In this document: positions 1 to 54,610 of the stretch, piece after piece
Numbering within the stretch: the stretch's first letter is position 1
How the letters are laid out: each line of letters starts with the position of its first letter
Assembly: GCA_010909165.1 (NCBI GenBank)
Contig: MU008183.1
Span: forward strand, 682,001 to 746,000
Reading direction: 5' to 3'
Origin: Anthoceros angustus
Taxonomy: Eukaryota > Plantae > Anthocerotophyta
DNA: 64,000 nt
Translations under genes and position numbers: made by a program
The notes under the pieces: generated by a model
Database searches by the model: none
Seen by the model: only the letters and a program-made list of their open reading frames with translations
What the model was told of the DNA's origin: nothing

Positions 1-400
1 CCCAGTCATCCTTATCACACATAATCAACTTGTCAATGTTGCCCACTAAGTCATCCATATTAGGTACAATTTCCGGTATGCTAAAAAACGCACTAACAGG
101 CTTACCGCTACTACTCACAAATCATATACCCAACTCATCCTTATTATACGATCAACTTATCATACCAATCAACTCACAAGTCATCTGCCCAAGTCATTTT
201 TGTTATACAATCAACTTACCACTACTATTCATAAATCATTTATCCAAATCATCCTTATTAAACAATCAACTTATTATTCTTGCTGACAAAGTCATCCGCC
301 CGGTCATCCTTATCATACACAATCTACTTGTCAATGCTACCCACTAAGTCATCCATATTAGGTAGAGATTCCCGGTATGTTCAAAAACGCACTAGCAGGT
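1..400. repeat. Degenerate tandem repeat (about 298-bp duplication built from about 60-bp subunits)
   Basis: 1-100 (gtcatccttatcacacataatcaacttgtcaatg...cactaacagg) recurs at about 303-400; the motif tcatcc..ttat..aatcaactt recurs several times in between. Confidence 0.75.
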
Positions 401-1437
401 GCACCTCCCAGTGTCGGGGTTTGGGTGGCCAGCAACTCCTCCAAGTTCGTACCGCGGTTGAGACACAACTGGAAAATCGGTGGCCCCAACGGTGGCACCA
501 GGTCAATTATCCCTTGAATCAGTAGCCAACAGCTTTCCAGAGGGACCCATCTAAAATGATCGGGGTGTTCTGGATCCGTGAGGGGAAAGCTAGGCTTCGC
601 AGGCTGCTCAGGCTGCTTAGATTGCTCAGGCTGCTCAGATTGCTCAGGCTGCTCAGATTGCTCGGGCTGCTCAGATTGCTCGGGCTGCTCAGATTGCTCA
701 GGCTGCTCAGATTGCTCAGGCTGTTCAGGCTGCTCAAAGTAGAGCAGCACAGCTTTGTGCTCGGCGAGACCTATCTCCACCAAATTGGGACTCGTTCTGT
801 ACTCTCCGAAGTGGAGAATGGGCGGCCAAATGTGACCGGGTCTCAACGTTCCTGCGTCCTTCAGGCTATGCAGGATATCCCTTAGCCTAACTACGCTGGA
901 ATCTCCGTACAGTTTCACTGCCCCCTTTAACCAATGTAATAGGCGGCACGAGCCCATGGCCCAATAATCATCCACCAGAAGATAGAGCTTGCGTGTTCCC
1001 TCTATCTCTCGTTCGTGTATGGCCAACAAGCGCACTATGAACTGGTCCTTCATGTCGTCCCTGACGGAACTCCACACCAGTTTTGTGGCAGAGTTGGGAC
1101 CATCCGCCAAATCACCAGCTACATTCCGGGCAGGCCGTGAATCGGCATTAATCGGCCTAGGATTGAACAGCACGGCCATATGCGAGGACCTCGGAAGGCT
1201 CCTTTGCTCCATGACATTCGTTTCCTCCCGAGCACCAGCTACATTCCGGGCAGGCCGTGAATCAACAATGTTAATCGGCCTAGTCGAATTGAACGGCACG
1301 GTCAGATGCGAGGGCCTCGGAAGGCTTCTTTCCTCCATGACATTCCTTTCCTCCCTCCCGCTCCCTGCAGAATCCTCGCCCTCCGTCTGTGTATTCGTGT
1401 TTTCCTCCCTCGAGCTCTCTGAATCCTCTTCCTCCAT
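358..1437 (-). CDS. Hypothetical 359-aa protein with an internal 39-40 aa duplication and (PEQSEQ)n low-complexity tract
   Basis: Long uninterrupted ORF starting at ATG, acidic N-terminus, plausible globular middle (KLYLLVDDYWAMGSCRLLHWLKG). No family recognised. Confidence 0.5.
   Translation of the reverse strand: MEEEDSESSREENTNTQTEGEDSAGSGREERNVMEERSLPRPSHLTVPFNSTRPINIVDSRPARNVAGAREETNVMEQRSLPRSSHMAVLFNPRPINADSRPARNVAGDLADGPNSATKLVWSSVRDDMKDQFIVRLLAIHEREIEGTRKLYLLVDDYWAMGSCRLLHWLKGAVKLYGDSSVVRLRDILHSLKDAGTLRPGHIWPPILHFGEYRTSPNLVEIGLAEHKAVLLYFEQPEQPEQSEQPEQSEQPEQSEQPEQSEQPEQSEQPEQSKQPEQPAKPSFPLTDPEHPDHFRWVPLESCWLLIQGIIDLVPPLGPPIFQLCLNRGTNLEELLATQTPTLGGAPASAFLNIPGIST
598..735. repeat. 18-bp minisatellite (caggctgctcagattgct), about 7 copies
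   Basis: Directly visible; encodes PEQSEQ repeats on the minus strand. Confidence 0.95.
1113..1355. repeat. About 120-bp direct duplication inside the 358-1437 ORF
   Basis: caccagctacattccgggcaggccgtgaatc occurs at about 1113 and 1234; encodes NVMEERSLPRPSH...DSRPARNVAG twice. Confidence 0.9.
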
Positions 1438-2324
1438 CCGTGAATTCAGTTTTCCTCCATCCCTGAAGAATATAATGCTTTAATCGAATCGCACCATTAA
1501 TTTAGGGAAGTTTGCGACGCTGTATGTAGATGTTTGCGGTCTGGTGTCTCTCTGGCGACCGTTGGCCCACGAACCGTGTTTCATCTTCCAGCGGAAAATC
1601 CCTGCCCTAATTCCCACCAAATTGAATCCGAAAGCAGTGTTCCAGAAAGCACCGATAATTGGGCAGCATGCTCATCATCCGATTCAGCTACCTACTTCAT
1701 AGGTTGCTTACATTCTGTTTTCATGACATTCATTCTCGTTTTTCTCTTTTGTCATCCGTAGCACCTCTCGTCTTCCAGGAGTTGGCTGTGACGCTGCTCG
1801 TCTTCAGGCATGACGACCTACGACGACGATGTCAGCTCGGGCTCGCAGCCCTGCGGCTTGTGATACGATCCGCAGCTACATCTGCTTTGAATCCTTCGGA
1901 GCGCTCCAGATCACTTCCCGGAGACCGCGGACGATCTTTTGAAGCCCGATGACACGGACTTGCCCTTCACAGCCACCGACGGGTAATTTGGCTATCACCA
2001 CTAAGCTAAACGACGAGGCTTTTCTTCACTGATTCCTTCCGGTCGTTTTGGTGTGTCTACAGTCGGGAGGCTGTGCTGTGAGCAGGCTCAGCAGCCGATC
2101 GGTCCTTCGCCTCCGTCCGCCACGCTGGAGTCGGTGGACATAGCCAGTTGGAGTGTCAAGGAGCGACACAGGAGTGAAACTTACGGGAAACTTCTGGATG
2201 CTCCAAACGACATGCGATATGGACGCCTGCTTTCTTGCGAAAAACTTTTTGAGTATTTCCATGTTCTCTAAACATGGACGATTACCCGGGCCGATTGACT
2301 ACCTACTGGGATGGGGTGTTGAAA

Positions 2325-17766: not shown

Positions 17767-17772
17767 GTTGCG
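17767..17772. repeat. Left target-site duplication GTTGCG
   Basis: Identical 6-mer immediately flanks both TIRs (17767-17772 and 41388-41393). Confidence 0.95.
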
Positions 17773-17799
17773 TATGGAATACCGATCTCGTCACACGGG
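17773..17799 (+). repeat. Left terminal inverted repeat TATGGAATACCGATCTCGTCACACGGG
   Basis: Exact reverse complement of 41361-41387. Confidence 0.97.
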
Positions 17800-34750: not shown

Positions 34751-35269
34751 TTGTCCGGCAGATATCAAAACCACATACCAGGAAGATGGATTGGTTGGAA
34801 ATGAAAATTGGGAGGTTGTGTATGGCGCCTCAAAGTGAAAGGGTTTGGTACATGTGCGAGCTACTCACGCCCACGCCACCAAAGGGAGGGGTTAGTGAAA
34901 TTAGGTGGAAGTGGCGATACCGCGGTGTTGGTTGGGTTTGAGCAGACGGCGCCCACCGCTGGTGATCGCCGGCGGTCGCAACCTGCGGAGAAGGGGGAAG
35001 GGACGGTTGCCGCGGTGGTCGGAAGGGAAACGCGGGTGCGCATTTACGTGCAAGGAAGGCGCGGCCGGGTGGCGGTGGGTGGAGTGCAACGCGCCCGACG
35101 CCTGTGCCGTGGAGGAGGATGAGGAACACAAGATCGCCGGGCGGCGATGAGCGAGGCGGCGCCTGTGGGTTGGTGTGTTCTCGGCCGGGCGGTTGCGCTT
35201 GAAGAGTGGAAGGTGGCCAGTGAGTAGGTAGTCGGAGCCCATGTCAGATGACCGCCGCAAATCACGGTG

Positions 35270-38200
35270 CGGATGCGCATGTTTGCGGTGTCCGGCGAGC
35301 ACGGCCTTGTGCGAGGGGCGCGTGGAAGGGCCGGGAGGAATGGGAGATGCAAAGCTCGCGAGTACATTCTGCGTGGCCTATGGTTCCCATCAACCATGGG
35401 AGCGTCCGAGTTCTTGGCATTTGTGGAGGACCATCAAAGCCGGTTCCGCGCATAGAGGGCTATCCAGAAACTTGCCGCAACGACTGCACCGCGAGGGACG
35501 ACCGGATGGAGTGGCGGTGGACAAATTATCGCGAGAGTGCCTACTGTGGAGTGCCACATTTTCATGCACCAAGTGTTCGGCTGGCCGCCGTCGGATGGAA
35601 GAGGTACCGGAAAGGAGAGCTGCCAAAAGCTGACGACCGCACCGGCGAGGGACGACCGGATGGAGTGGCGGTGGACAAATTATCGCGAGAGTGCATACCG
35701 TGGAGTGCCACATTTTCATGCACCAAGTGTTCGAGTTGGCGCCGGATGGAAGAGGTACCGGAAAGGAGAGCTGCCGAACGGACGACCTTAGGATTTGGTT
35801 TTCCGTGCACGCATCGAGTGCCACCGACCGTGGAGAGGTGGCCTATGAGGTATTATGAATTGGTTGATTTCGCGCGGTATGGAGAAATGGAATGGAATGA
35901 GAAGACGGAGCGTTGTTCCGGGATATCAACCGCGAGAGAACCATGTTCGAGTACTTGGGATGCGAGCGGGAAGGTAACCGTGCCGGCCGTGAAGGCACAA
36001 AATTGTAATGCGTTGCGGTTGGGAATGGCGTGATGCGGAGCACAGCCGATGGTGAACGCCAGCCGCAAGGGTGAGGCGGCGGCTTCGCATGGCTGCGACG
36101 GCCACGCCCGAGGGTAACCGCCGCTAAGTTGCGGATCGTTGTAAGGTGTGCGGCGTGCGCGATTGCACATTCAATGTTTGCTGAAAATGCACGGTGTGAA
36201 AACGAGAATCGCATGTGGCTCGCATGGCATCGCATTGCACACGACCGACGGAAGGGTGCGTGAAACATGCGCATATGCCGCAGCGCTATGATGCGGATGC
36301 GCGAATGGAGCGGGCGTAAAGGCGCCGCTGGGGATCTCGACGATCCCGAGGCCGCAAGTATACCTATGATTCCGTGCACATTCAATGCCCGCCATGATGG
36401 TGCGTTCGAAACGGGGAGGCGATGGAGGAGGAGGTGCGGTGCACGCGCCTGTGAAGGAGCCATGGCGACGACGGAGGAGGGAGGAGTGGGAGAGGCCATG
36501 GACAACCCGTGGTCGTCCGAACGGAAGGTGGAGTGGAAGTCACGCCGCGGTGGTGGATCAACCGATTGGCGCACCCACCTTGGGAGGGGCGGGACGTCGA
36601 TCTCGTGGAGGTGCACCACAAGTGGAGACAGGTGCTCACGCAGCGCGATGCCGCATCCGCGGTCACCATGAATTCTCAAACCTCGCTATTGATTGCGTGG
36701 TGGATTGCACAGCGGTCTCCATTGCCCACGGCCATGCTTGGGCGGCTCAAGGAGGCGTGACTCCGCCCACAACGAGCGACAGTACGAAGGGCTATGTGGC
36801 CTCCAAGGAAATGCTTTGCGCGGGCTCGTGAGCCTCACAACTCTTGTGTGTGCGTGGTATGATCCATTCGAGTTTGCGGCCGACAGTGAGAGCGTGGGCG
36901 TGGACGCGTGCCACCGCGCAGGACGATCGAGGCGGCGGTGGATGGTCGGGCGCCGCCGAGGAGAGCGCAATGCGGCGGAGGAAGGGGCGGCCGGGCAAGA
37001 TGATGCGCCGGCGACGGGCGATGCGCGGCCGACCGGAGGTTGTGGGCGAGGTCATCGAGCGGCGGTTTTGGCCGACCGTCCCCGCCGAACGCCTCGCCGG
37101 GCGCCAATGCGGGGATCGGCACATGCCGGACGGGCGGGGCGCGAGGAGTGGAAGCGACGGTGGCTCGCGAAGCCCGGGCGACGGAGCCGGTGTGGGAGTG
37201 GGAGTCCGCAAATCCACTCCACCGACTCCGCATGTGCGAGCGAGGCATGTACCGGGAGGGCGAGAAATGTGGCACGATGCTGGTCCGGGAAATGGGTACT
37301 CATGGTATTGGAGGTTCCATTGTCCGCAATGCACAAAGATTTCATTTTCGGTGGAGAGGATCGACAGGGCCTACCATTGAGGTCGGGTTGGAGGTGGAGT
37401 GAAGGTGCGGCATCATGCACGCCTTGGGCACGGAATGCGAACGCGCAAAGAATCGGCATGGCACGTTGGTGCCGTTGTGGATGCAATTCGAAGAGTGGAT
37501 TGCAATCTGCGTGCTCGACCATCGAGATAGGAACGCCACCGTGACCATGCTCGTGAGAAGTCAATGGAGGCTTCGTGGGAGTTTTCAACAGAGAAGGACG
37601 CCTTTTTCGCAATCACCGCTGCTCAAAGTGGAGGAAAGCAGTTGGATGGCACCCTATGGTCGCAGTGGAGGGAATGATAGCGGCGGATGTTCGCAATCGG
37701 AGAAGTGGAGTTGGAAGCTAGGTGAGGCGGTTGGGCGGAATGGGACCGGCGTCACATGTGCTCGTGGACCGGGCCAAAGCGGCATTGGAACATGCGTGAG
37801 GCTCGTTTGTCAGGTTGGGACATTGAGCATCCTCCTGTGGAGTTGGATCAACACAATTTTTGTGGGTCACGCTCATTGCCGTCGGTACAACAGACGGAGC
37901 ATTTCATATGTTACATGGACTCAATCGAACGAAGAGGGAGTATTCCAAACCTGGAAGCATGTGACCGATTATCGTGGCATGCCACACAATGGGGGTCGAC
38001 GGATACGCCCGATAGCCGGAAGATCCCATGCCTTTTGTTCGCACCGAGGACCGTCGTGGAACCCCCGCATTGAGGTAAGGCAGTGTTCTCGCTATTTGCC
38101 GGGTTTGCAAGCGAAGTCAAGAGTGAAGATAGGAGAGCGGGCCATCGAATTGTCGATGGCCTCCGAAAATGGGCGGTGGACGGCAAGTGTGTTTGCCGCA

Positions 38201-38859: not shown

Positions 38860-40805
38860 CGGGTGCGCGCGCCTTACACCGCAAACTGTATGATTTGGCG
38901 GCAAAGACTGGTGGAGACCATTGAAAGGCCTACCGACGGAGCTAGGCCGCAGCTTGAGCACGGTGACGAGGCTCTCGTGACGACACGGCATGGCGCGGGT
39001 GTATGGGAGGTTGTCCGTGGAGGAGGTGTGCACGATTGCCACGCACACACCCATCACCCAAGACGTGAACGCCGGAATACGATTCGTGCGTGCAGAAATC
39101 GGATGGAATCGAAATCCCAAGGAGGCAGGTCACGGAGGCGCTTGATGGCTGAGCACATGGCACGACGGCCGAAAGGCGCATCCGCTGGCCCAAGACACCA
39201 ATGCGACACCCATGTACATGTGGCATATGGATTGGGTGCGTGAGAGGAGGGGGGGCACATGTTCGCAGTTCGCGGCAGGGAAGGAAGGTGAGTTGTGACC
39301 GCAATCACCGACGGAGCTAGGCAGTTTGAGCACGGTGACGAGGCTCCTGCATCGGCACACGGCATGGCGCGGGGTGTATGGGAGGTTGTCCGTGGAGGAG
39401 GTGTGCACGCTGATTGCCACGCACACACCCATCACCCGGCACGGCGTGAATGCTGGAATACGATTCGTGCAGGCAGAGCTGCAACTGGATGGAATCGAAA
39501 TCCCTAGGAGGCAGGTCACGGAGGCGCTGCGTTTGATGCAGCCGGAGCACATGGCACGAGCCGATAAAGGCGATCCGCTGGCCCAAGACACCAATGCGAC
39601 ACCCATGTACATGTGGCATATGGATTGTAAGTGCGTGAGAGGAGGGGGGGTCGCGATGTTCGCAGTGTTCGCGGTGCAGGAAGAAGTGATTGCAGGAGTT
39701 GTGACCGCAATCACCGACGGTGCCTCGTGGTTGCCTTGTGCGCAATTTTATGACAAGACCAATTCTACTTGAGTGCACGGGGCCATAGATGGGGCAACCC
39801 ATTACGCCCCGTTGGTGCCGGAGGATAACAAGCGGGAACGACGATTTTCAACGCCTATGTGGAAGCAAGTGAGGAAGTTTGGGCATCCGCAGGATTTGGC
39901 CGACACGCAGCAGAGCACAACCTATAGAGGCGATATGAACCGAGCGAGGCCAAGGGCACATGGAAGCAACTTCATCCGCGCCCCTCTGCACAACTGTAAA
40001 AGTTAGGAGGTTGGTCTCCTTGTCCGCAGTGATACCGGTGAAGTCGTGAATGCGGATTGTTGCAGGATTGAGCATTTCGGTCCTTGGGAGAGAAGTGGGC
40101 ATTCCTCTACAAGGGTACATGATGGATATGGTGAGGAGCAATGAATCGACATCACCAACCTCGGCACATCCATTCCCCACGCGTGACCTTCATGCCCACG
40201 ATGAGGGCGGAGCTCGAGCGTTGGAGGTGTATGGAATAGGCACCGGTGCGGAAGATCGTGCCGATGTGGACATTCCCGCCATGTGCTCGCATCGCATTCC
40301 AAGAAGAAGGTCGACTACAAGGGTGGGTGCACACCCGCATATGGGGGTGAGGAGGACGATGGCGAGGAGTTCGATGTGGTGGCCTCAAGATGCACAAAAC
40401 GTGGCCCCCGAGATGCCACCACTCAGCGGCATAGAATTGCTGAGCGGGGTGAGCAACTGCAGGCTGCCTGTCCATTTATTTTGTCCAGTTAGATTGTGGA
40501 GGGGGAGGGCGATCGCGCCATTTGTGCACGGGAATCGAATCGATGGGCCATCATGGGTTGTGCAGGAACTGCAGATGGCGAGGGACAATGCATATGCAAA
40601 GGGATTGCAGGACATGGACTTCCTCCTGACATGTATCGGCCGACATGGCACTAACAACACTGCAGGAGTGCAGGAGCACAGGGACGATTGTTCAATACCT
40701 CCACCGGATTTGAGGTCAAGCCACCCGCGGGCGTGGACGGCCATCACGCCGCGTCTATGGTGCACGAGGTGTGAGGGGCGTGGCCCAGATTCGCTTCCGG
40801 AGTGA
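38860..40805 (+). pseudogene. IS3EU-like (IS3/IS481-related) DDE transposase, frameshifted as assembled; 5' part tandemly duplicated
   Basis: HTH-like ELGRSLSTVTRLL; YGRLSVEEV; GIRFVQAELQLDGIEIPRRQVTEALRLMQP; WHMD (39614-39625); HGAIDG (39776-39793); FGHP..D.AAEHN after a frameshift; HN (39989) then a probable intron and RIEHF (about 40064-40078); LERWR..WNRHR (40232-40246). Start and end are approximate. Confidence 0.85.
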
Positions 40806-41360
40806 GCTAGGTGTCGGAGAAAAGTGTTTTGTGCGCCACCATGACCGGGAGCGGTGATTTTGTGCGCTCACCATCACCGGGAGCGTGACAATTTGGATTT
40901 GTTTGTTCGCGCTTTGAGAGTTGAGCGGGTGGCTTTGTTGTGGTGGAATGTAAAGGCCGGTTGTGTGAAGATGGTGTGCGCCACCGCGAGGCCTATGGCT
41001 GGCCTCAGCGCACGACGCCGGATGGTCGCGATAGCCAGCGCGAGGCGCATGGCGCCGACGCTATCAGTACAGGCGATGCCGCCGCGCATATGTGCCCTTG
41101 TGCCTCCTCCACGCTATCTCCCATAAAGCCCGGTGACGGTATCGTGATGGCAAACGAATGGATGTCCGATGGCCCATGCCCTCACAGCGAAAACATTGTG
41201 TGTCACAACCACAAAAGATTCCTGACACAAACCACATTAGTGACGAGATCGGGACACGAGGGCAGGCGCCGACGACCGATGTCGTCAAGGAGACCAGAAG
41301 TTTTCCCGCCGTATGCGGCCGGAAAACTTCTTTGGTCACAATGGAAAAAAACCCTAAAGG

Positions 41361-41387
41361 CCCGTGTGACGAGATCGGTATTCCATA
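41361..41387 (-). repeat. Right terminal inverted repeat
   Basis: cccgtgtgacgagatcggtattccata; its core gtgacgagatcgg recurs subterminally at 41240-41252. Confidence 0.97.
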
Positions 41388-41393
41388 GTTGCG
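41388..41393. repeat. Right target-site duplication GTTGCG
   Basis: Matches 17767-17772. Confidence 0.95.
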
Positions 41394-50000: not shown

Positions 50001-50603
50001 AGGAGGTGTGGATCCGGAGGAGGAACTAGATTCACAAAGCGTGCCGACCAACTCGCTTGTTGTGCACGAGGACTCGAACAAAGATCTGAATGAGATGAAC
50101 CTGTTTCTCTGCGTTCCTGAAGGACCCAGAAAAACAGTTCAGGGACGCAGAAAAACAGGTGGGGAGGCTTCGTTTCGGTTAATGTTTCGCAGGCGGTCTG
50201 AGCATACAGCAAGTGTTCATCGTAGGAAGTCTCTTATTCCAGAAGAGAGACCGTGAAGGTATTACAGTGTGTTTATACCAGTAGTGAGATGGGGGTAGGG
50301 CCAGGCTGCCTAGGCAGGCCTGATCCCTTTACTGTGAGAATTAGTTAACAAGACCTCTTCGTAAACCTCTTTTACGGGAGTGGGGGGCATGTTAGGGGTA
50401 GGAGAGCGAACGCGGCGAACCTGCCTTGTGGCCGGCGGTATGCTAAATGGTCGCTTAACAGCCCAAACGGTCAGGTCGGTGAAGGCTCCGCTACCGCAGT
50501 AGAAAGGCCGTGAGACTCCACTGTGCTGCTACCATGAAAGGCAGGGAGGCTCCAGTGTGCTGCTACCATCTGTGTGAAGGGAGCTGGAGGGGAAGATGGC
50601 AGC

Positions 50604-54610
<4,007 letters not shown>

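What the first reader, a model, noticed from the sequence alone, without database searches (positions are those of the whole stretch)
38860..40805. Spliced IS3/IS481-type DDE transposase with recognisable catalytic motifs
Seen across frames: HTH-like ELGRSLSTVTRLL, GIRFVQAELQLDGIEIPRRQVTEALRLMQP, WHMD, HGAIDG, FGHP..D.AAEHN, HN..RIEHF and WNRHR. Established: this order matches the eukaryotic IS3EU-type core (W-H-x-D, HGxIDG, PxxxRxDxGxEN, HNQRIERxW, WNxH). Inference: a GT-AG intron at about 39996-40065 splits HN from RIE, suggesting adaptation to the host nucleus rather than bacterial contamination. Its closest relatives would show whether it is ancient in plants or was acquired from fungi or algae.
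Basis: partly seen in the sequence, partly recalled or inferred. Interest (0 to 1): 0.8.

Follow-up and report, generated by a model that had tools for sequence, protein, structure and literature searches.

The report
Decayed GingerRoot/IS3EU transposase gene copy
This stretch is a broken, partly duplicated copy of the three-exon transposase gene of a known plant "cut-and-paste" transposon group (IS3EU/GingerRoot), lying just inside the right end of a 23.6-kb element. The suspected intron is real for the family, but this copy cannot make a working enzyme, so the find is fairly ordinary.

Summary
The motifs are real and in the stated order, and the ordered chain never appeared in 300 simulated windows. 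The gene is an IS3EU/GingerRoot (Pfam rva_4) DDE transposase. Its N-terminal ORF finds 12 genuine relatives. In six of the relatives' contigs (five distinct loci), ORFs matching rva_4 follow that ORF directly. Those ORFs are about 54% identical to the GingerRoot DDE sequence printed in the 2019 paper.

The gene sits 1 kb inside the right end of a 23.6-kb element with perfect 27-bp TA...TA inverted ends and a 6-bp target duplication.

Intron-less contigs from two sequencing runs read HNQRIE without a break.

This copy is dead as assembled:
- exon 1 is tandemly duplicated;
- there are 11 frameshifts and two stop codons;
- intron 1 has no acceptor AG;
- the intron 2 junction is 4 nt short, so splicing gives TGA.

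A host ORF 10 kb away has no frameshifts, so this is probably real decay. No reads were available to confirm that.

Earlier follow-ups of this scan reported similar dead GingerRoot/IS3EU elements elsewhere in this genome. This is a new member of a known kind, of low to moderate interest.

The parts
17767..17772 (.). Left target-site duplication, GTTGCG
   Evidence: Read directly from the sequence. Identical to 41388-41393.
17773..17799 (+). Left terminal inverted repeat, 27 bp, starting TATGG
   Evidence: 27/27 match to 41387-41361 by BLAST. Sequences read.
38932..39317 (+). Copy A of a tandem duplication. It holds a degraded exon 1 fragment (HTH to WHMD) plus the start of intron 1. Its donor site is destroyed (GATTG--GGTGCG).
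   Evidence: 84% identical to 39307-39723 over 423 columns, with about 12 gaps. Hits to the exon 1 profile at 38981-39142 (E 1e-4) and 39069-39149 (E 0.046).
39307..39626 (+). Exon 1 (copy B): an HTH-like N-terminal region, a linker, and the first catalytic D in WHMD (D = 39623-39625). The last base, 39626, is the first base of a split codon.
   Evidence: The open frame 39299-39769 hits the exon 1 profile built from relatives at E 1.6e-25. A phmmer search of 1.84 billion proteins gave a best E of 8.8e-12.
39627..39746 (+). Intron 1 (phase 1). The donor GTAAGT is at 39627-39632. The expected acceptor AG just upstream of the YDK codons (39749) is absent as assembled.
   Evidence: The donor GAY N|GT[AG]AG is shared by all 9 related loci and the window. 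The acceptor yAG|cn TAY GAY AAR is present in all 5 loci that cover it but not in the window. The alignment program independently placed a skip at 39629-39748.
39747..39995 (+). Exon 2. It holds YDK, an in-frame TGA (39770-72), HGAIDG, the second catalytic D (39902-39904), AAEHN in a shifted frame, a TAG (39925-27) and HN (39989-94). There are 5 frameshifts, and the Q codon before the donor is reduced to one T.
   Evidence: Exon 2 profile E 4.6e-6. Frameshift-aware alignments give z 13-18. Frameshifts lie near 39809, 39834, 39868, 39899 and 39925.
39996..40065 (+). It lies between HN(Q) and RIE. The junction is 4 nt short of the relatives' CAG|GT...AG|AGR, so splicing as assembled gives CAC AAC TGA.
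   Evidence: Junction DNA of the window and relatives. Skip placed at 39995-40060. The intron-less contigs L013/L014 read CAT AAC CAG AGG ATT GAA.
40066..40339 (+). Exon 3 remnant: RIEHF (codons 40064-40078; the R codon overlaps the acceptor AG), catalytic E at 40070-40072, WNRHR at 40232-40246, and an RKI...AFQEEGRLQGW tail. There are 6 frameshifts.
   Evidence: Frameshift-aware alignment to L002 exon 3 gives z 7.4, and to P0030 z 25 over the whole gene. The stop-to-stop pieces alone do not hit the exon 3 profile.
40340..40805 (+). No significant similarity to the C-terminal parts of relatives.
   Evidence: The C-terminal queries from L012 and L001 found no significant match in 40340-40805: z -0.8 for L012, and for L001 z 0.5 with its best local alignment lying in exon 3. 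Only low-value skips were placed there. Pfam found nothing.
41361..41387 (-). Right terminal inverted repeat, 27 bp, ending CCATA
41388..41393 (.). Right target-site duplication, GTTGCG

Best explanation
The interval holds a non-functional copy of the three-exon DDE transposase gene of an IS3EU/GingerRoot DNA transposon (Pfam rva_4, an integrase-like RNase H-fold core).

In an intact family member the protein would have three parts:
- an N-terminal helix-turn-helix region that presumably binds the TA...TA inverted ends;
- a catalytic core carrying D (WHxD), D (RSD) and E (HNQ-RIE, 33 residues after the second D in locus L004);
- a C-terminal tail.

That protein would cut the element out and insert it with a 6-bp staggered cut. 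This mechanism is inferred from the family, not shown here.

The gene is interrupted by two spliceosomal introns at conserved positions. One is phase 1, one base after the WHxD codons. The other is phase 0, between HNQ and RIE, two codons before the catalytic E.

The copy in this window lies 1 kb inside the right end of a 23.6-kb element (17773-41387) that has intact ends. The gene itself has decayed: part of exon 1 plus the start of intron 1 is tandemly duplicated, and there are at least 11 frameshifts, two stop codons, a lost intron 1 acceptor and a damaged intron 2 junction. If the element moved recently, it must have used transposase supplied by another copy.
For: **Relatives found through the N-terminal ORF.**
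- The N-terminal ORF finds 13 proteins at E <= 0.001, of which 12 are genuine relatives and one (P0011) is an unrelated repeat protein. The best E-values are 8.8e-12 and 6.1e-11.
- Ten of them reach WH[MI]D; 9 continue DC[KE] and one DSE. This is the read-through of a GT[AG]AG donor.
- In six of the relatives' contigs with sequence downstream (L001, L002, L003, L004, L008, L011), the next ORFs match PF24764 rva_4.
- My own scan of four of them gave exon 2 E 5e-18 to 2e-8, covering profile positions 17-103 in three and from position 31 in the truncated L001 ORF. Exon 3 gave E 2e-14 to 4e-7, starting at profile position 104. The rve family scored only 0.014.

**Link to the window.**
- Per-exon profiles built from the relatives hit the window at E 1.6e-25 (exon 1) and 4.6e-6 (exon 2), among 2902 fragments.
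- A frameshift- and skip-aware alignment of the natural 370-aa relative P0030 (rva_4 E 3e-45) to 39250-40900 scores 311, against 100 +/- 8 for shuffled queries (z 25).
- It gives 128 identities in 301 aligned pairs. Its two long skips fall on the two introns.

**Link to the named family.**
- The GingerRoot paper prints the Sl-GR-005 DDE query, which includes IHGAIDASSH, RVRSD and HNQKIEAFW (PMC6839031).
- By eye it is 58/108 identical to L004 exons 2 and 3.

**Element ends.**
- The inverted repeats are 27/27 identical, running TATGG...CCATA, with a 6-bp duplication GTTGCG.
- This matches the TA..TA termini and 6-bp duplications given for IS3EU/GingerRoot (PMC10045372; PMC6839031).

**Decay rather than sequencing noise.**
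- The host ORF at 50578-51756 keeps one frame across FAD_binding_6 and a complete NAD_binding_1 (profile 1-108 of 109, E 9e-24).
- The transposase has 11 frameshifts in about 570 nt.
Against: - None of the window's own pieces reaches any Pfam family, even at E <= 1. Family membership therefore rests on relatives as intermediates.
- The comparison with the named GingerRoot sequence was done by eye, not by a tool.
- No sequencing run was listed for this stretch. Assembly or polishing errors confined to repeats cannot be excluded as the source of some frameshifts.
- The inverted repeat is only 27 bp, against 100-150 bp reported for Selaginella GingerRoot.
- No matching ends were found in the relatives' contigs.
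- The organisms carrying the relatives are unknown.
Confidence: 0.88

Rival explanations
1. The gene is intact and possibly active in the real genome. On this view the frameshifts, stops and perhaps the tandem duplication are errors of an insufficiently polished long-read assembly, which are worst in repeats.
For: - Amino-acid similarity stays high within each short frame segment while indels are frequent.
- The two tandem copies differ by about 12 gaps against about 25 substitutions.
- The element's ends and target duplication are perfect.
- Earlier notes from this scan call parts of this genome badly polished (untested here).
Against: - A host ORF 10 kb away keeps its frame over about 590 nt of matched domains. 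At the transposase's frameshift density, about 11 frameshifts would be expected there.
- Several lesions are multi-base or substitutional: TGA at 39770, TAG at 39925, the Q codon reduced to T, loss of the acceptor AG, and gaps of 3-8 nt between the tandem copies.
- Relatives in other assemblies are also broken (L008 and L012 carry stops, L001 a frameshift). Decay is therefore common in this family.
Confidence: 0.08
2. It is a fragment of an LTR-retrotransposon (Ty3/Gypsy or Ty1/Copia) integrase, not a DNA-transposon transposase.
For: - The core is integrase-like.
- Protein-atlas features of the 77-aa core piece resemble rve fragments.
- rve matches L004 exon 2 weakly, at E 0.014.
Against: - rva_4 beats rve by more than 13 orders of magnitude in the relatives.
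- The N-terminus is HTH-like, with a single cysteine and no HHCC zinc finger.
- No reverse transcriptase, protease or LTRs were found nearby. The ten longest ORFs inside the element have no Pfam hit.
- The element has TA...TA inverted ends and a 6-bp duplication.
Confidence: 0.02
3. It is a bacterial IS3/IS481 insertion sequence, present through contamination or a recent transfer.
For: The atlas's nearest clusters for the core piece are bacterial IS481/rve fragments (score 0.92).
Against: - Two GT-AG introns at positions shared with 9 related loci.
- One relative lies next to BEACH/WD40 genes, which are typical of eukaryotes.
- The atlas's best cluster for the N-terminal piece is eukaryotic rva_4 (score 0.95).
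- The termini are TA..TA, not the TG..CA of IS3/IS481 (PMC10045372).
Confidence: 0.01
4. It is a host gene derived from a transposase (domesticated) rather than part of a mobile element.
For: An earlier follow-up of this scan reported a transposase-derived host gene elsewhere in this genome (untested here).
Against: - It lies inside an element with intact inverted ends and a target duplication.
- It is riddled with frameshifts and stops.
- It is partly duplicated.
Confidence: 0.01

Closest known systems
GingerRoot (Cerbin et al. 2019, Selaginella lepidophylla; PMC6839031), merged with the Repbase IS3EU superfamily as IS3EU/GingerRoot (Kojima and Bao 2023; PMC10045372)
   Same: - An integrase-like DDE core with the same motif series: HGAID, RVRSD, HNQ[KR]IEAFW.
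- By eye, 58/108 identities between the printed Sl-GR-005 segment and the relative L004.
- 5'-TA...TA-3' termini and a 6-bp target duplication.
- No HHCC zinc finger.
- Found in a non-seed land plant.
   Different: - The perfect inverted repeat is only 27 bp, against 100-150 bp reported.
- The element is very large (23.6 kb), mostly unrecognisable GC-rich and repetitive interior.
- The gene copy is dead.
- The text of the 2019 paper does not describe the two conserved intron positions.
- If the host is a hornwort, as earlier scan notes say (untested), that lineage is not among those listed in 2019.
Pfam PF24764 rva_4 (integrase core domain)
   Same: - Relatives match end to end: P0030 at E 3e-45 over profile positions 2-170 of 194.
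- The exon 2/exon 3 boundary falls at profile position 103/104.
   Different: The window's own fragments are too broken to reach the family in a direct scan.
IS481EU (parabasalids) and bacterial IS481/IS3
   Same: - The same broad DDE/integrase class with an HTH-type N-terminus.
- Not separable from IS3EU/GingerRoot in the published tree (PMC10045372).
   Different: - IS481EU makes target duplications of about 4, 15 or 25 bp.
- IS3 and IS481 end TG..CA and have no introns.
- Here the duplication is 6 bp, the ends are TA..TA, and there are two spliceosomal introns.
Ginger1, Ginger2/TDD and Gypsy integrases
   Same: An RNase H-fold DDE integrase core. Ginger2 also makes a 6-bp duplication.
   Different: - Those elements end TG..CA.
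- Ginger1 and Gypsy carry HHCC and GPY motifs, which are absent here.

Membership tests
IS3EU/GingerRoot DNA transposons | Transposase sequence belongs with named GingerRoot/IS3EU proteins | tested here: inconclusive
   The relative L004 is 58/108 identical, by eye, to the Sl-GR-005 DDE segment printed in PMC6839031. The window links to those relatives at E 1.6e-25 and 4.6e-6 and z 25. No tool alignment or tree against Repbase or GingerRoot proteins could be run: those sequences are not held, and a long typed string was not sent.
IS3EU/GingerRoot DNA transposons | 5'-TA...TA-3' termini | tested here: met
   The element starts TATGG at 17773 and ends CCATA at 41387. The rule is stated in PMC10045372 and PMC6839031.
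IS3EU/GingerRoot DNA transposons | 6-bp target-site duplication | tested here: met
   GTTGCG at 17767-17772 and at 41388-41393. It is GC-rich, as reported for GingerRoot duplications.
IS3EU/GingerRoot DNA transposons | Terminal inverted repeats of 100-150 bp (Selaginella GingerRoot) | tested here: not met
   Only 27 bp are inverted-repeated. The sequences diverge completely beyond that. This length was reported for one species, and the Repbase IS3EU definition quoted does not require it.
IS3EU/GingerRoot DNA transposons | DDE triad present, with no HHCC zinc finger upstream | tested here: met
   D 39623-25, D 39902-04 and E 40070-72 align with the relatives' WHMD, RSD and RIE. The window's exon 1 has one cysteine and no CxxC. 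The relatives' exon 1 gives only weak HTH hits.
Pfam PF24764 rva_4 | Score above the gathering threshold (26 bits) | tested here: not met
   The window's pieces give 0 families at E <= 1, because the domain is split by introns, frameshifts and stops. Relatives score 30-155 bits.
Functional (autonomous) transposase gene | Open reading frame across correctly spliced exons | tested here: not met
   There are 11 frameshifts, a TGA at 39770, a TAG at 39925, no acceptor AG for intron 1, and an intron 2 splice that gives TGA. No reads were available to rule out assembly error.
LTR-retrotransposon integrase (Pfam rve with HHCC) | Best family match is rve, with an HHCC N-terminal domain and flanking RT/LTRs | tested here: not met
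   rve scores E 0.014 against rva_4 at 1.6e-15 on the same exon. There is no HHCC. No Pfam hit was found in the ten longest internal ORFs.

The most novel reading that the evidence does not exclude
Land-plant GingerRoot/IS3EU transposase genes share two old spliceosomal introns. One splits the catalytic HNQ|RIE motif two codons before the active-site glutamate. That would mean the family has lived and diversified vertically in plant nuclei for a long time, including in this host. There it has given rise to unusually large (>20 kb) elements, some of which may still be mobilised by an intact copy elsewhere in the genome.
Probability: 0.3. Interest if true: 0.4.

Novelty: new member of a known kind. 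Interest (0 to 1): 0.25.

Why it matters
The result assigns the transposase of the 23.6-kb element in this window to a named superfamily. It also shows that this copy cannot drive the element's own movement.

The one piece of wider value is the gene structure. Two intron positions are shared by nine related loci and confirmed by intron-less contigs. They give annotators a three-exon template for finding GingerRoot transposases that ORF-based or prokaryote-style gene callers cut into three unrecognisable pieces. They also argue against bacterial contamination. Beyond that, the find is ordinary.

Tried and rejected
- **Pfam on eight window ORF pieces:** nothing at E <= 1.
- **Word-index protein search with the 148-aa ORF:** nothing within the allowed length range.
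- **Metagenome related-loci scan:** 188 pattern matches, none confirmed.
- **PDB sequence searches** with both pieces and with an exon 2 profile: only two non-significant matches (E 0.59 and 1.9, methylated-DNA methyltransferase) for the 148-aa piece, and none for the other two.
- **Sequencing runs:** none was listed for this stretch. Read laying was therefore not used, and neither the introns nor the frameshifts could be tested on reads.
- **A weak colinear hit on the minus strand at 35170-35400:** proline-rich low-complexity sequence, not a second transposase copy.
- **Search for the window's inverted-repeat sequence in the relatives' contigs:** only chance-level matches with 3 mismatches.
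- **AlphaFold model of the relative P0030 from a shallow mixed alignment:** mean pLDDT 63.5. The catalytic core was mostly below pLDDT 50, and only the helical N-terminal region was confident. No fold search was run on it.
- **Literature searches:** "IS3EU" with "hornwort" found no paper, and "PF24764/rva_4" returned only unrelated papers.
the position is right, but the junction is out of frame as assembled.

Full report
**1. Observation**

- the HTH-like ELG(R)SLSTVTRL at 38939 in copy A, and again in copy B;
- the GIRFVQAELQLDGIEIPRRQVTEALRLMQP block inside the only sizeable open frame (39326-39769, 148 aa);
- WHMD (39614-39625);
- HGAIDG (39776-39793);
- FGHP (39878) followed by AAEHN in another frame (39907-39921);
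- HN (39989-39994);
- RIEHF (40064-40078);
- WNRHR (40232-40246).

The ordered chain WHxD > HGxIDG > RIE > WNxH occurs once in the window. It occurred in none of 300 second-order Markov simulations.

**2.

The region 38932-39317 is a degraded tandem copy of 39307-39723. The two are 84% identical over 423 columns, with about 12 gaps. The repeat unit runs from the HTH into the first intron. Its borders share the short sequence ACCGACGG.

The whole gene lies inside a larger element. BLAST of the region against the window found a perfect 27-bp inverted repeat, at 17773-17799 and 41387-41361, running TATGG...CCATA. It is flanked on both sides by GTTGCG. The gene's 3' end is about 1 kb from the right end of the element.

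**3. What the gene is**

The window's own pieces hit nothing in Pfam, nothing in the word-index search and nothing significant in PDB. The protein atlas gave leads only: eukaryotic rva_4 for the N-terminal ORF (score 0.95) and rve/IS481 fragments for the core piece (0.92).

The exhaustive phmmer search with the 148-aa ORF found 13 proteins, the best at 8.8e-12 and 6.1e-11. Twelve are genuine relatives; P0011 is an unrelated repeat protein. The eleven genuine relatives whose sequences were read are short ORF calls (the twelfth, the 2572-aa P0012, was not read), and ten of them reach WH[MI]D; nine continue DC[KE].

I fetched their contigs. Wherever sequence continues downstream, the N-terminal ORF is followed by further ORFs after about 60-140 nt. 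The next ORF matches PF24764 rva_4 at full strength in six contigs (L001, L002, L003, L004, L008, L011) and only weakly in L009 and L010.

My own scan of four of them gave these results:

| Exon | E-value | rva_4 profile positions |
|---|---|---|
| Exon 2 | 5e-18 to 2e-8 | 17-103 (from position 31 in the truncated L001 ORF) |
| Exon 3 | 2e-14 to 4e-7 | from 104 |

On the same exon 2, the rve family scored only 0.014.

The GingerRoot paper prints its Sl-GR-005 DDE query, which contains IHGAIDASSH, RVRSD and HNQKIEAFW (PMC6839031). Aligned by eye to L004 exons 2 and 3, it is identical at 58 of 108 positions. I did not send that 115-letter string to any tool, because it has no reference.

**4. 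Linking the window to those relatives**

- **Per-exon profiles.** Profiles built from the relatives were searched against all 2902 stop-to-stop fragments of the window. They hit 39299-39769 at E 1.6e-25 and 39773-40003 at E 4.6e-6. Exon 3 is too fragmented to hit.
- **Alignments that allow frameshifts.** I wrote a protein-to-DNA aligner for this. It gave z 13-18 for exon 2 and z 7.4 for exon 3 against L002.
- **A full-length relative.** The second word search returned P0030, a natural uninterrupted 370-aa protein (rva_4 E 3e-45). Aligned to 39250-40900 it scores 311, against 100 +/- 8 for shuffled queries (z 25). There are 128 identities in 301 aligned pairs. The program placed its two long skips at 39629-39748 and 39995-40060.
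- **Catalytic residues.** These align as D 39623-25 (WHMD), D 39902-04 (the relatives' RSD) and E 40070-72 (RIE). In L004 the second D and the E are 33 residues apart.

**5. Introns**

Junction DNA shows the same pattern in every locus that covers the junction concerned.

- **Intron 1.** The donor reads GAY N|GT[AG]AG one base after the WHxD codons, in 9 of 9 loci and in the window (GT at 39627). The acceptor is yAG|cn TAY GAY AAR, in all 5 loci that cover it. The split codon then reads Ser.
- **Intron 2.** The junction reads CAG|GTA ... yAG|AGR ATT GAR, between HNQ and RIE.
- **Lengths.** Intron 1 is 107-274 nt in the relatives and intron 2 is 105-296 nt.
- **Intron-less contigs.** L013 and L014 come from two different runs and are 100% identical over 1830 nt. 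They align to the genomic locus L002 in three blocks that skip exactly L002's two introns. They read WHMD-S-YDK and HNQ-RIE without a break. They are most simply spliced transcripts, but I could not check the library type.

A second conserved intron was missed.

**6. State of this copy**

- Intron 1 has its donor but no AG in the 50 nt before YDK.
- At intron 2 the Q codon is reduced to a single T, and the R codon overlaps the acceptor AG. Splicing as assembled would read CAC AAC TGA.
- TGA lies in frame at 39770.
- TAG follows AAEHNL at 39925.
- One search places 5 frameshifts in exon 2 and 6 in exon 3.
- Beyond about 40340 there is no detectable similarity to the relatives' C-termini.

Is this assembly noise? 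A host ORF at 50578-51756 keeps one frame through FAD_binding_6 and a complete NAD_binding_1 domain (E 9e-24). That is about 590 nt, where the transposase's frameshift density would predict about 11 frameshifts. Unique sequence nearby is therefore clean, and real decay is the better reading. Polishing failure confined to repeats cannot be excluded, because no sequencing run was listed.

**7. Comparison with what is known**

IS3EU/GingerRoot elements are defined by TA..TA termini, usually 6-bp target duplications, and an integrase-like DDE transposase without HHCC (PMC10045372; PMC6839031). All of these are met here.

The 100-150-bp inverted repeats of Selaginella GingerRoot are not met; here the repeat is 27 bp.

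Among plants, GingerRoot was reported from bryophytes and lycophytes, so a non-seed-plant host is expected. Earlier follow-ups in this scan reported similar dead IS3EU/GingerRoot elements elsewhere in this genome. My result agrees with them and adds the exon-intron structure.

The relatives come from unnamed environmental or run assemblies, and no taxonomy was available.

**Verdict**

The object is an ordinary dead member of a known transposon superfamily. The conserved three-exon structure is a small new detail.

Noticed in passing
window 50578-51756 (+): A 393-aa open frame with a complete NAD_binding_1 domain (E 9e-24) and a partial FAD_binding_6 domain, resembling a ferredoxin-NADP-reductase-type host gene. 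I used it only as a control for frameshift noise.
   Followed up: partly
window 38932-39317 and 39307-39723: A tandem duplication of part of exon 1 plus the start of intron 1. Its borders share ACCGACGG, which suggests a microhomology-mediated duplication or an assembly artefact. The copies differ by about 12 gaps and about 25 substitutions.
   Followed up: partly
window 17773-38900 (interior of the element): The ten longest open frames inside the 23.6-kb element give no Pfam hit at E <= 0.01. The interior is GC-rich (up to 65%) and holds several tandem repeats with periods of 89-181 bp.
   Followed up: partly
L009 3367-3900 and L010 2792-3300: In this related family, exon 2 is itself split. 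The part ending ...APTIYSG and the part beginning ...YAEAVAKYG are in different frames about 200 nt apart. This is either an extra intron or an insertion. That copy also has a stop after RPNV.
   Followed up: no
L010 5299-6657: BEACH and WD40 gene fragments lie next to a related GingerRoot copy in a JGI metagenome contig. The relatives therefore sit in eukaryotic genomes whose identity is unknown. The same N-terminal ORF occurs on 15 contigs.
   Followed up: no
L013 1200-1600 (and the identical L014): The intron-less contigs change frame between ...ADNAHY and ...EAQG relative to the genomic relative L002. The 370-aa ORF therefore ends early, and a conserved C-terminal block (IRDRAYE...EEKYAFHLGLTAEC) continues in another frame. 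Possible causes are a retained or alternative intron, or a transcribed defective copy.
   Followed up: no
window 39697-39700: An upstream AG at 39697-39698 would give an in-frame alternative splice from the intron 1 donor (72-nt intron). It would add 16 residues before YDK. This is speculative and has no support from the relatives.
   Followed up: no
window 361-1479 (-): A 373-aa open frame with a sub-threshold match to glutenin-like low-complexity repeats (E 1e-5, 24.7 bits against a 50-bit cutoff). It is probably just Q/P-rich repetitive sequence.
   Followed up: no
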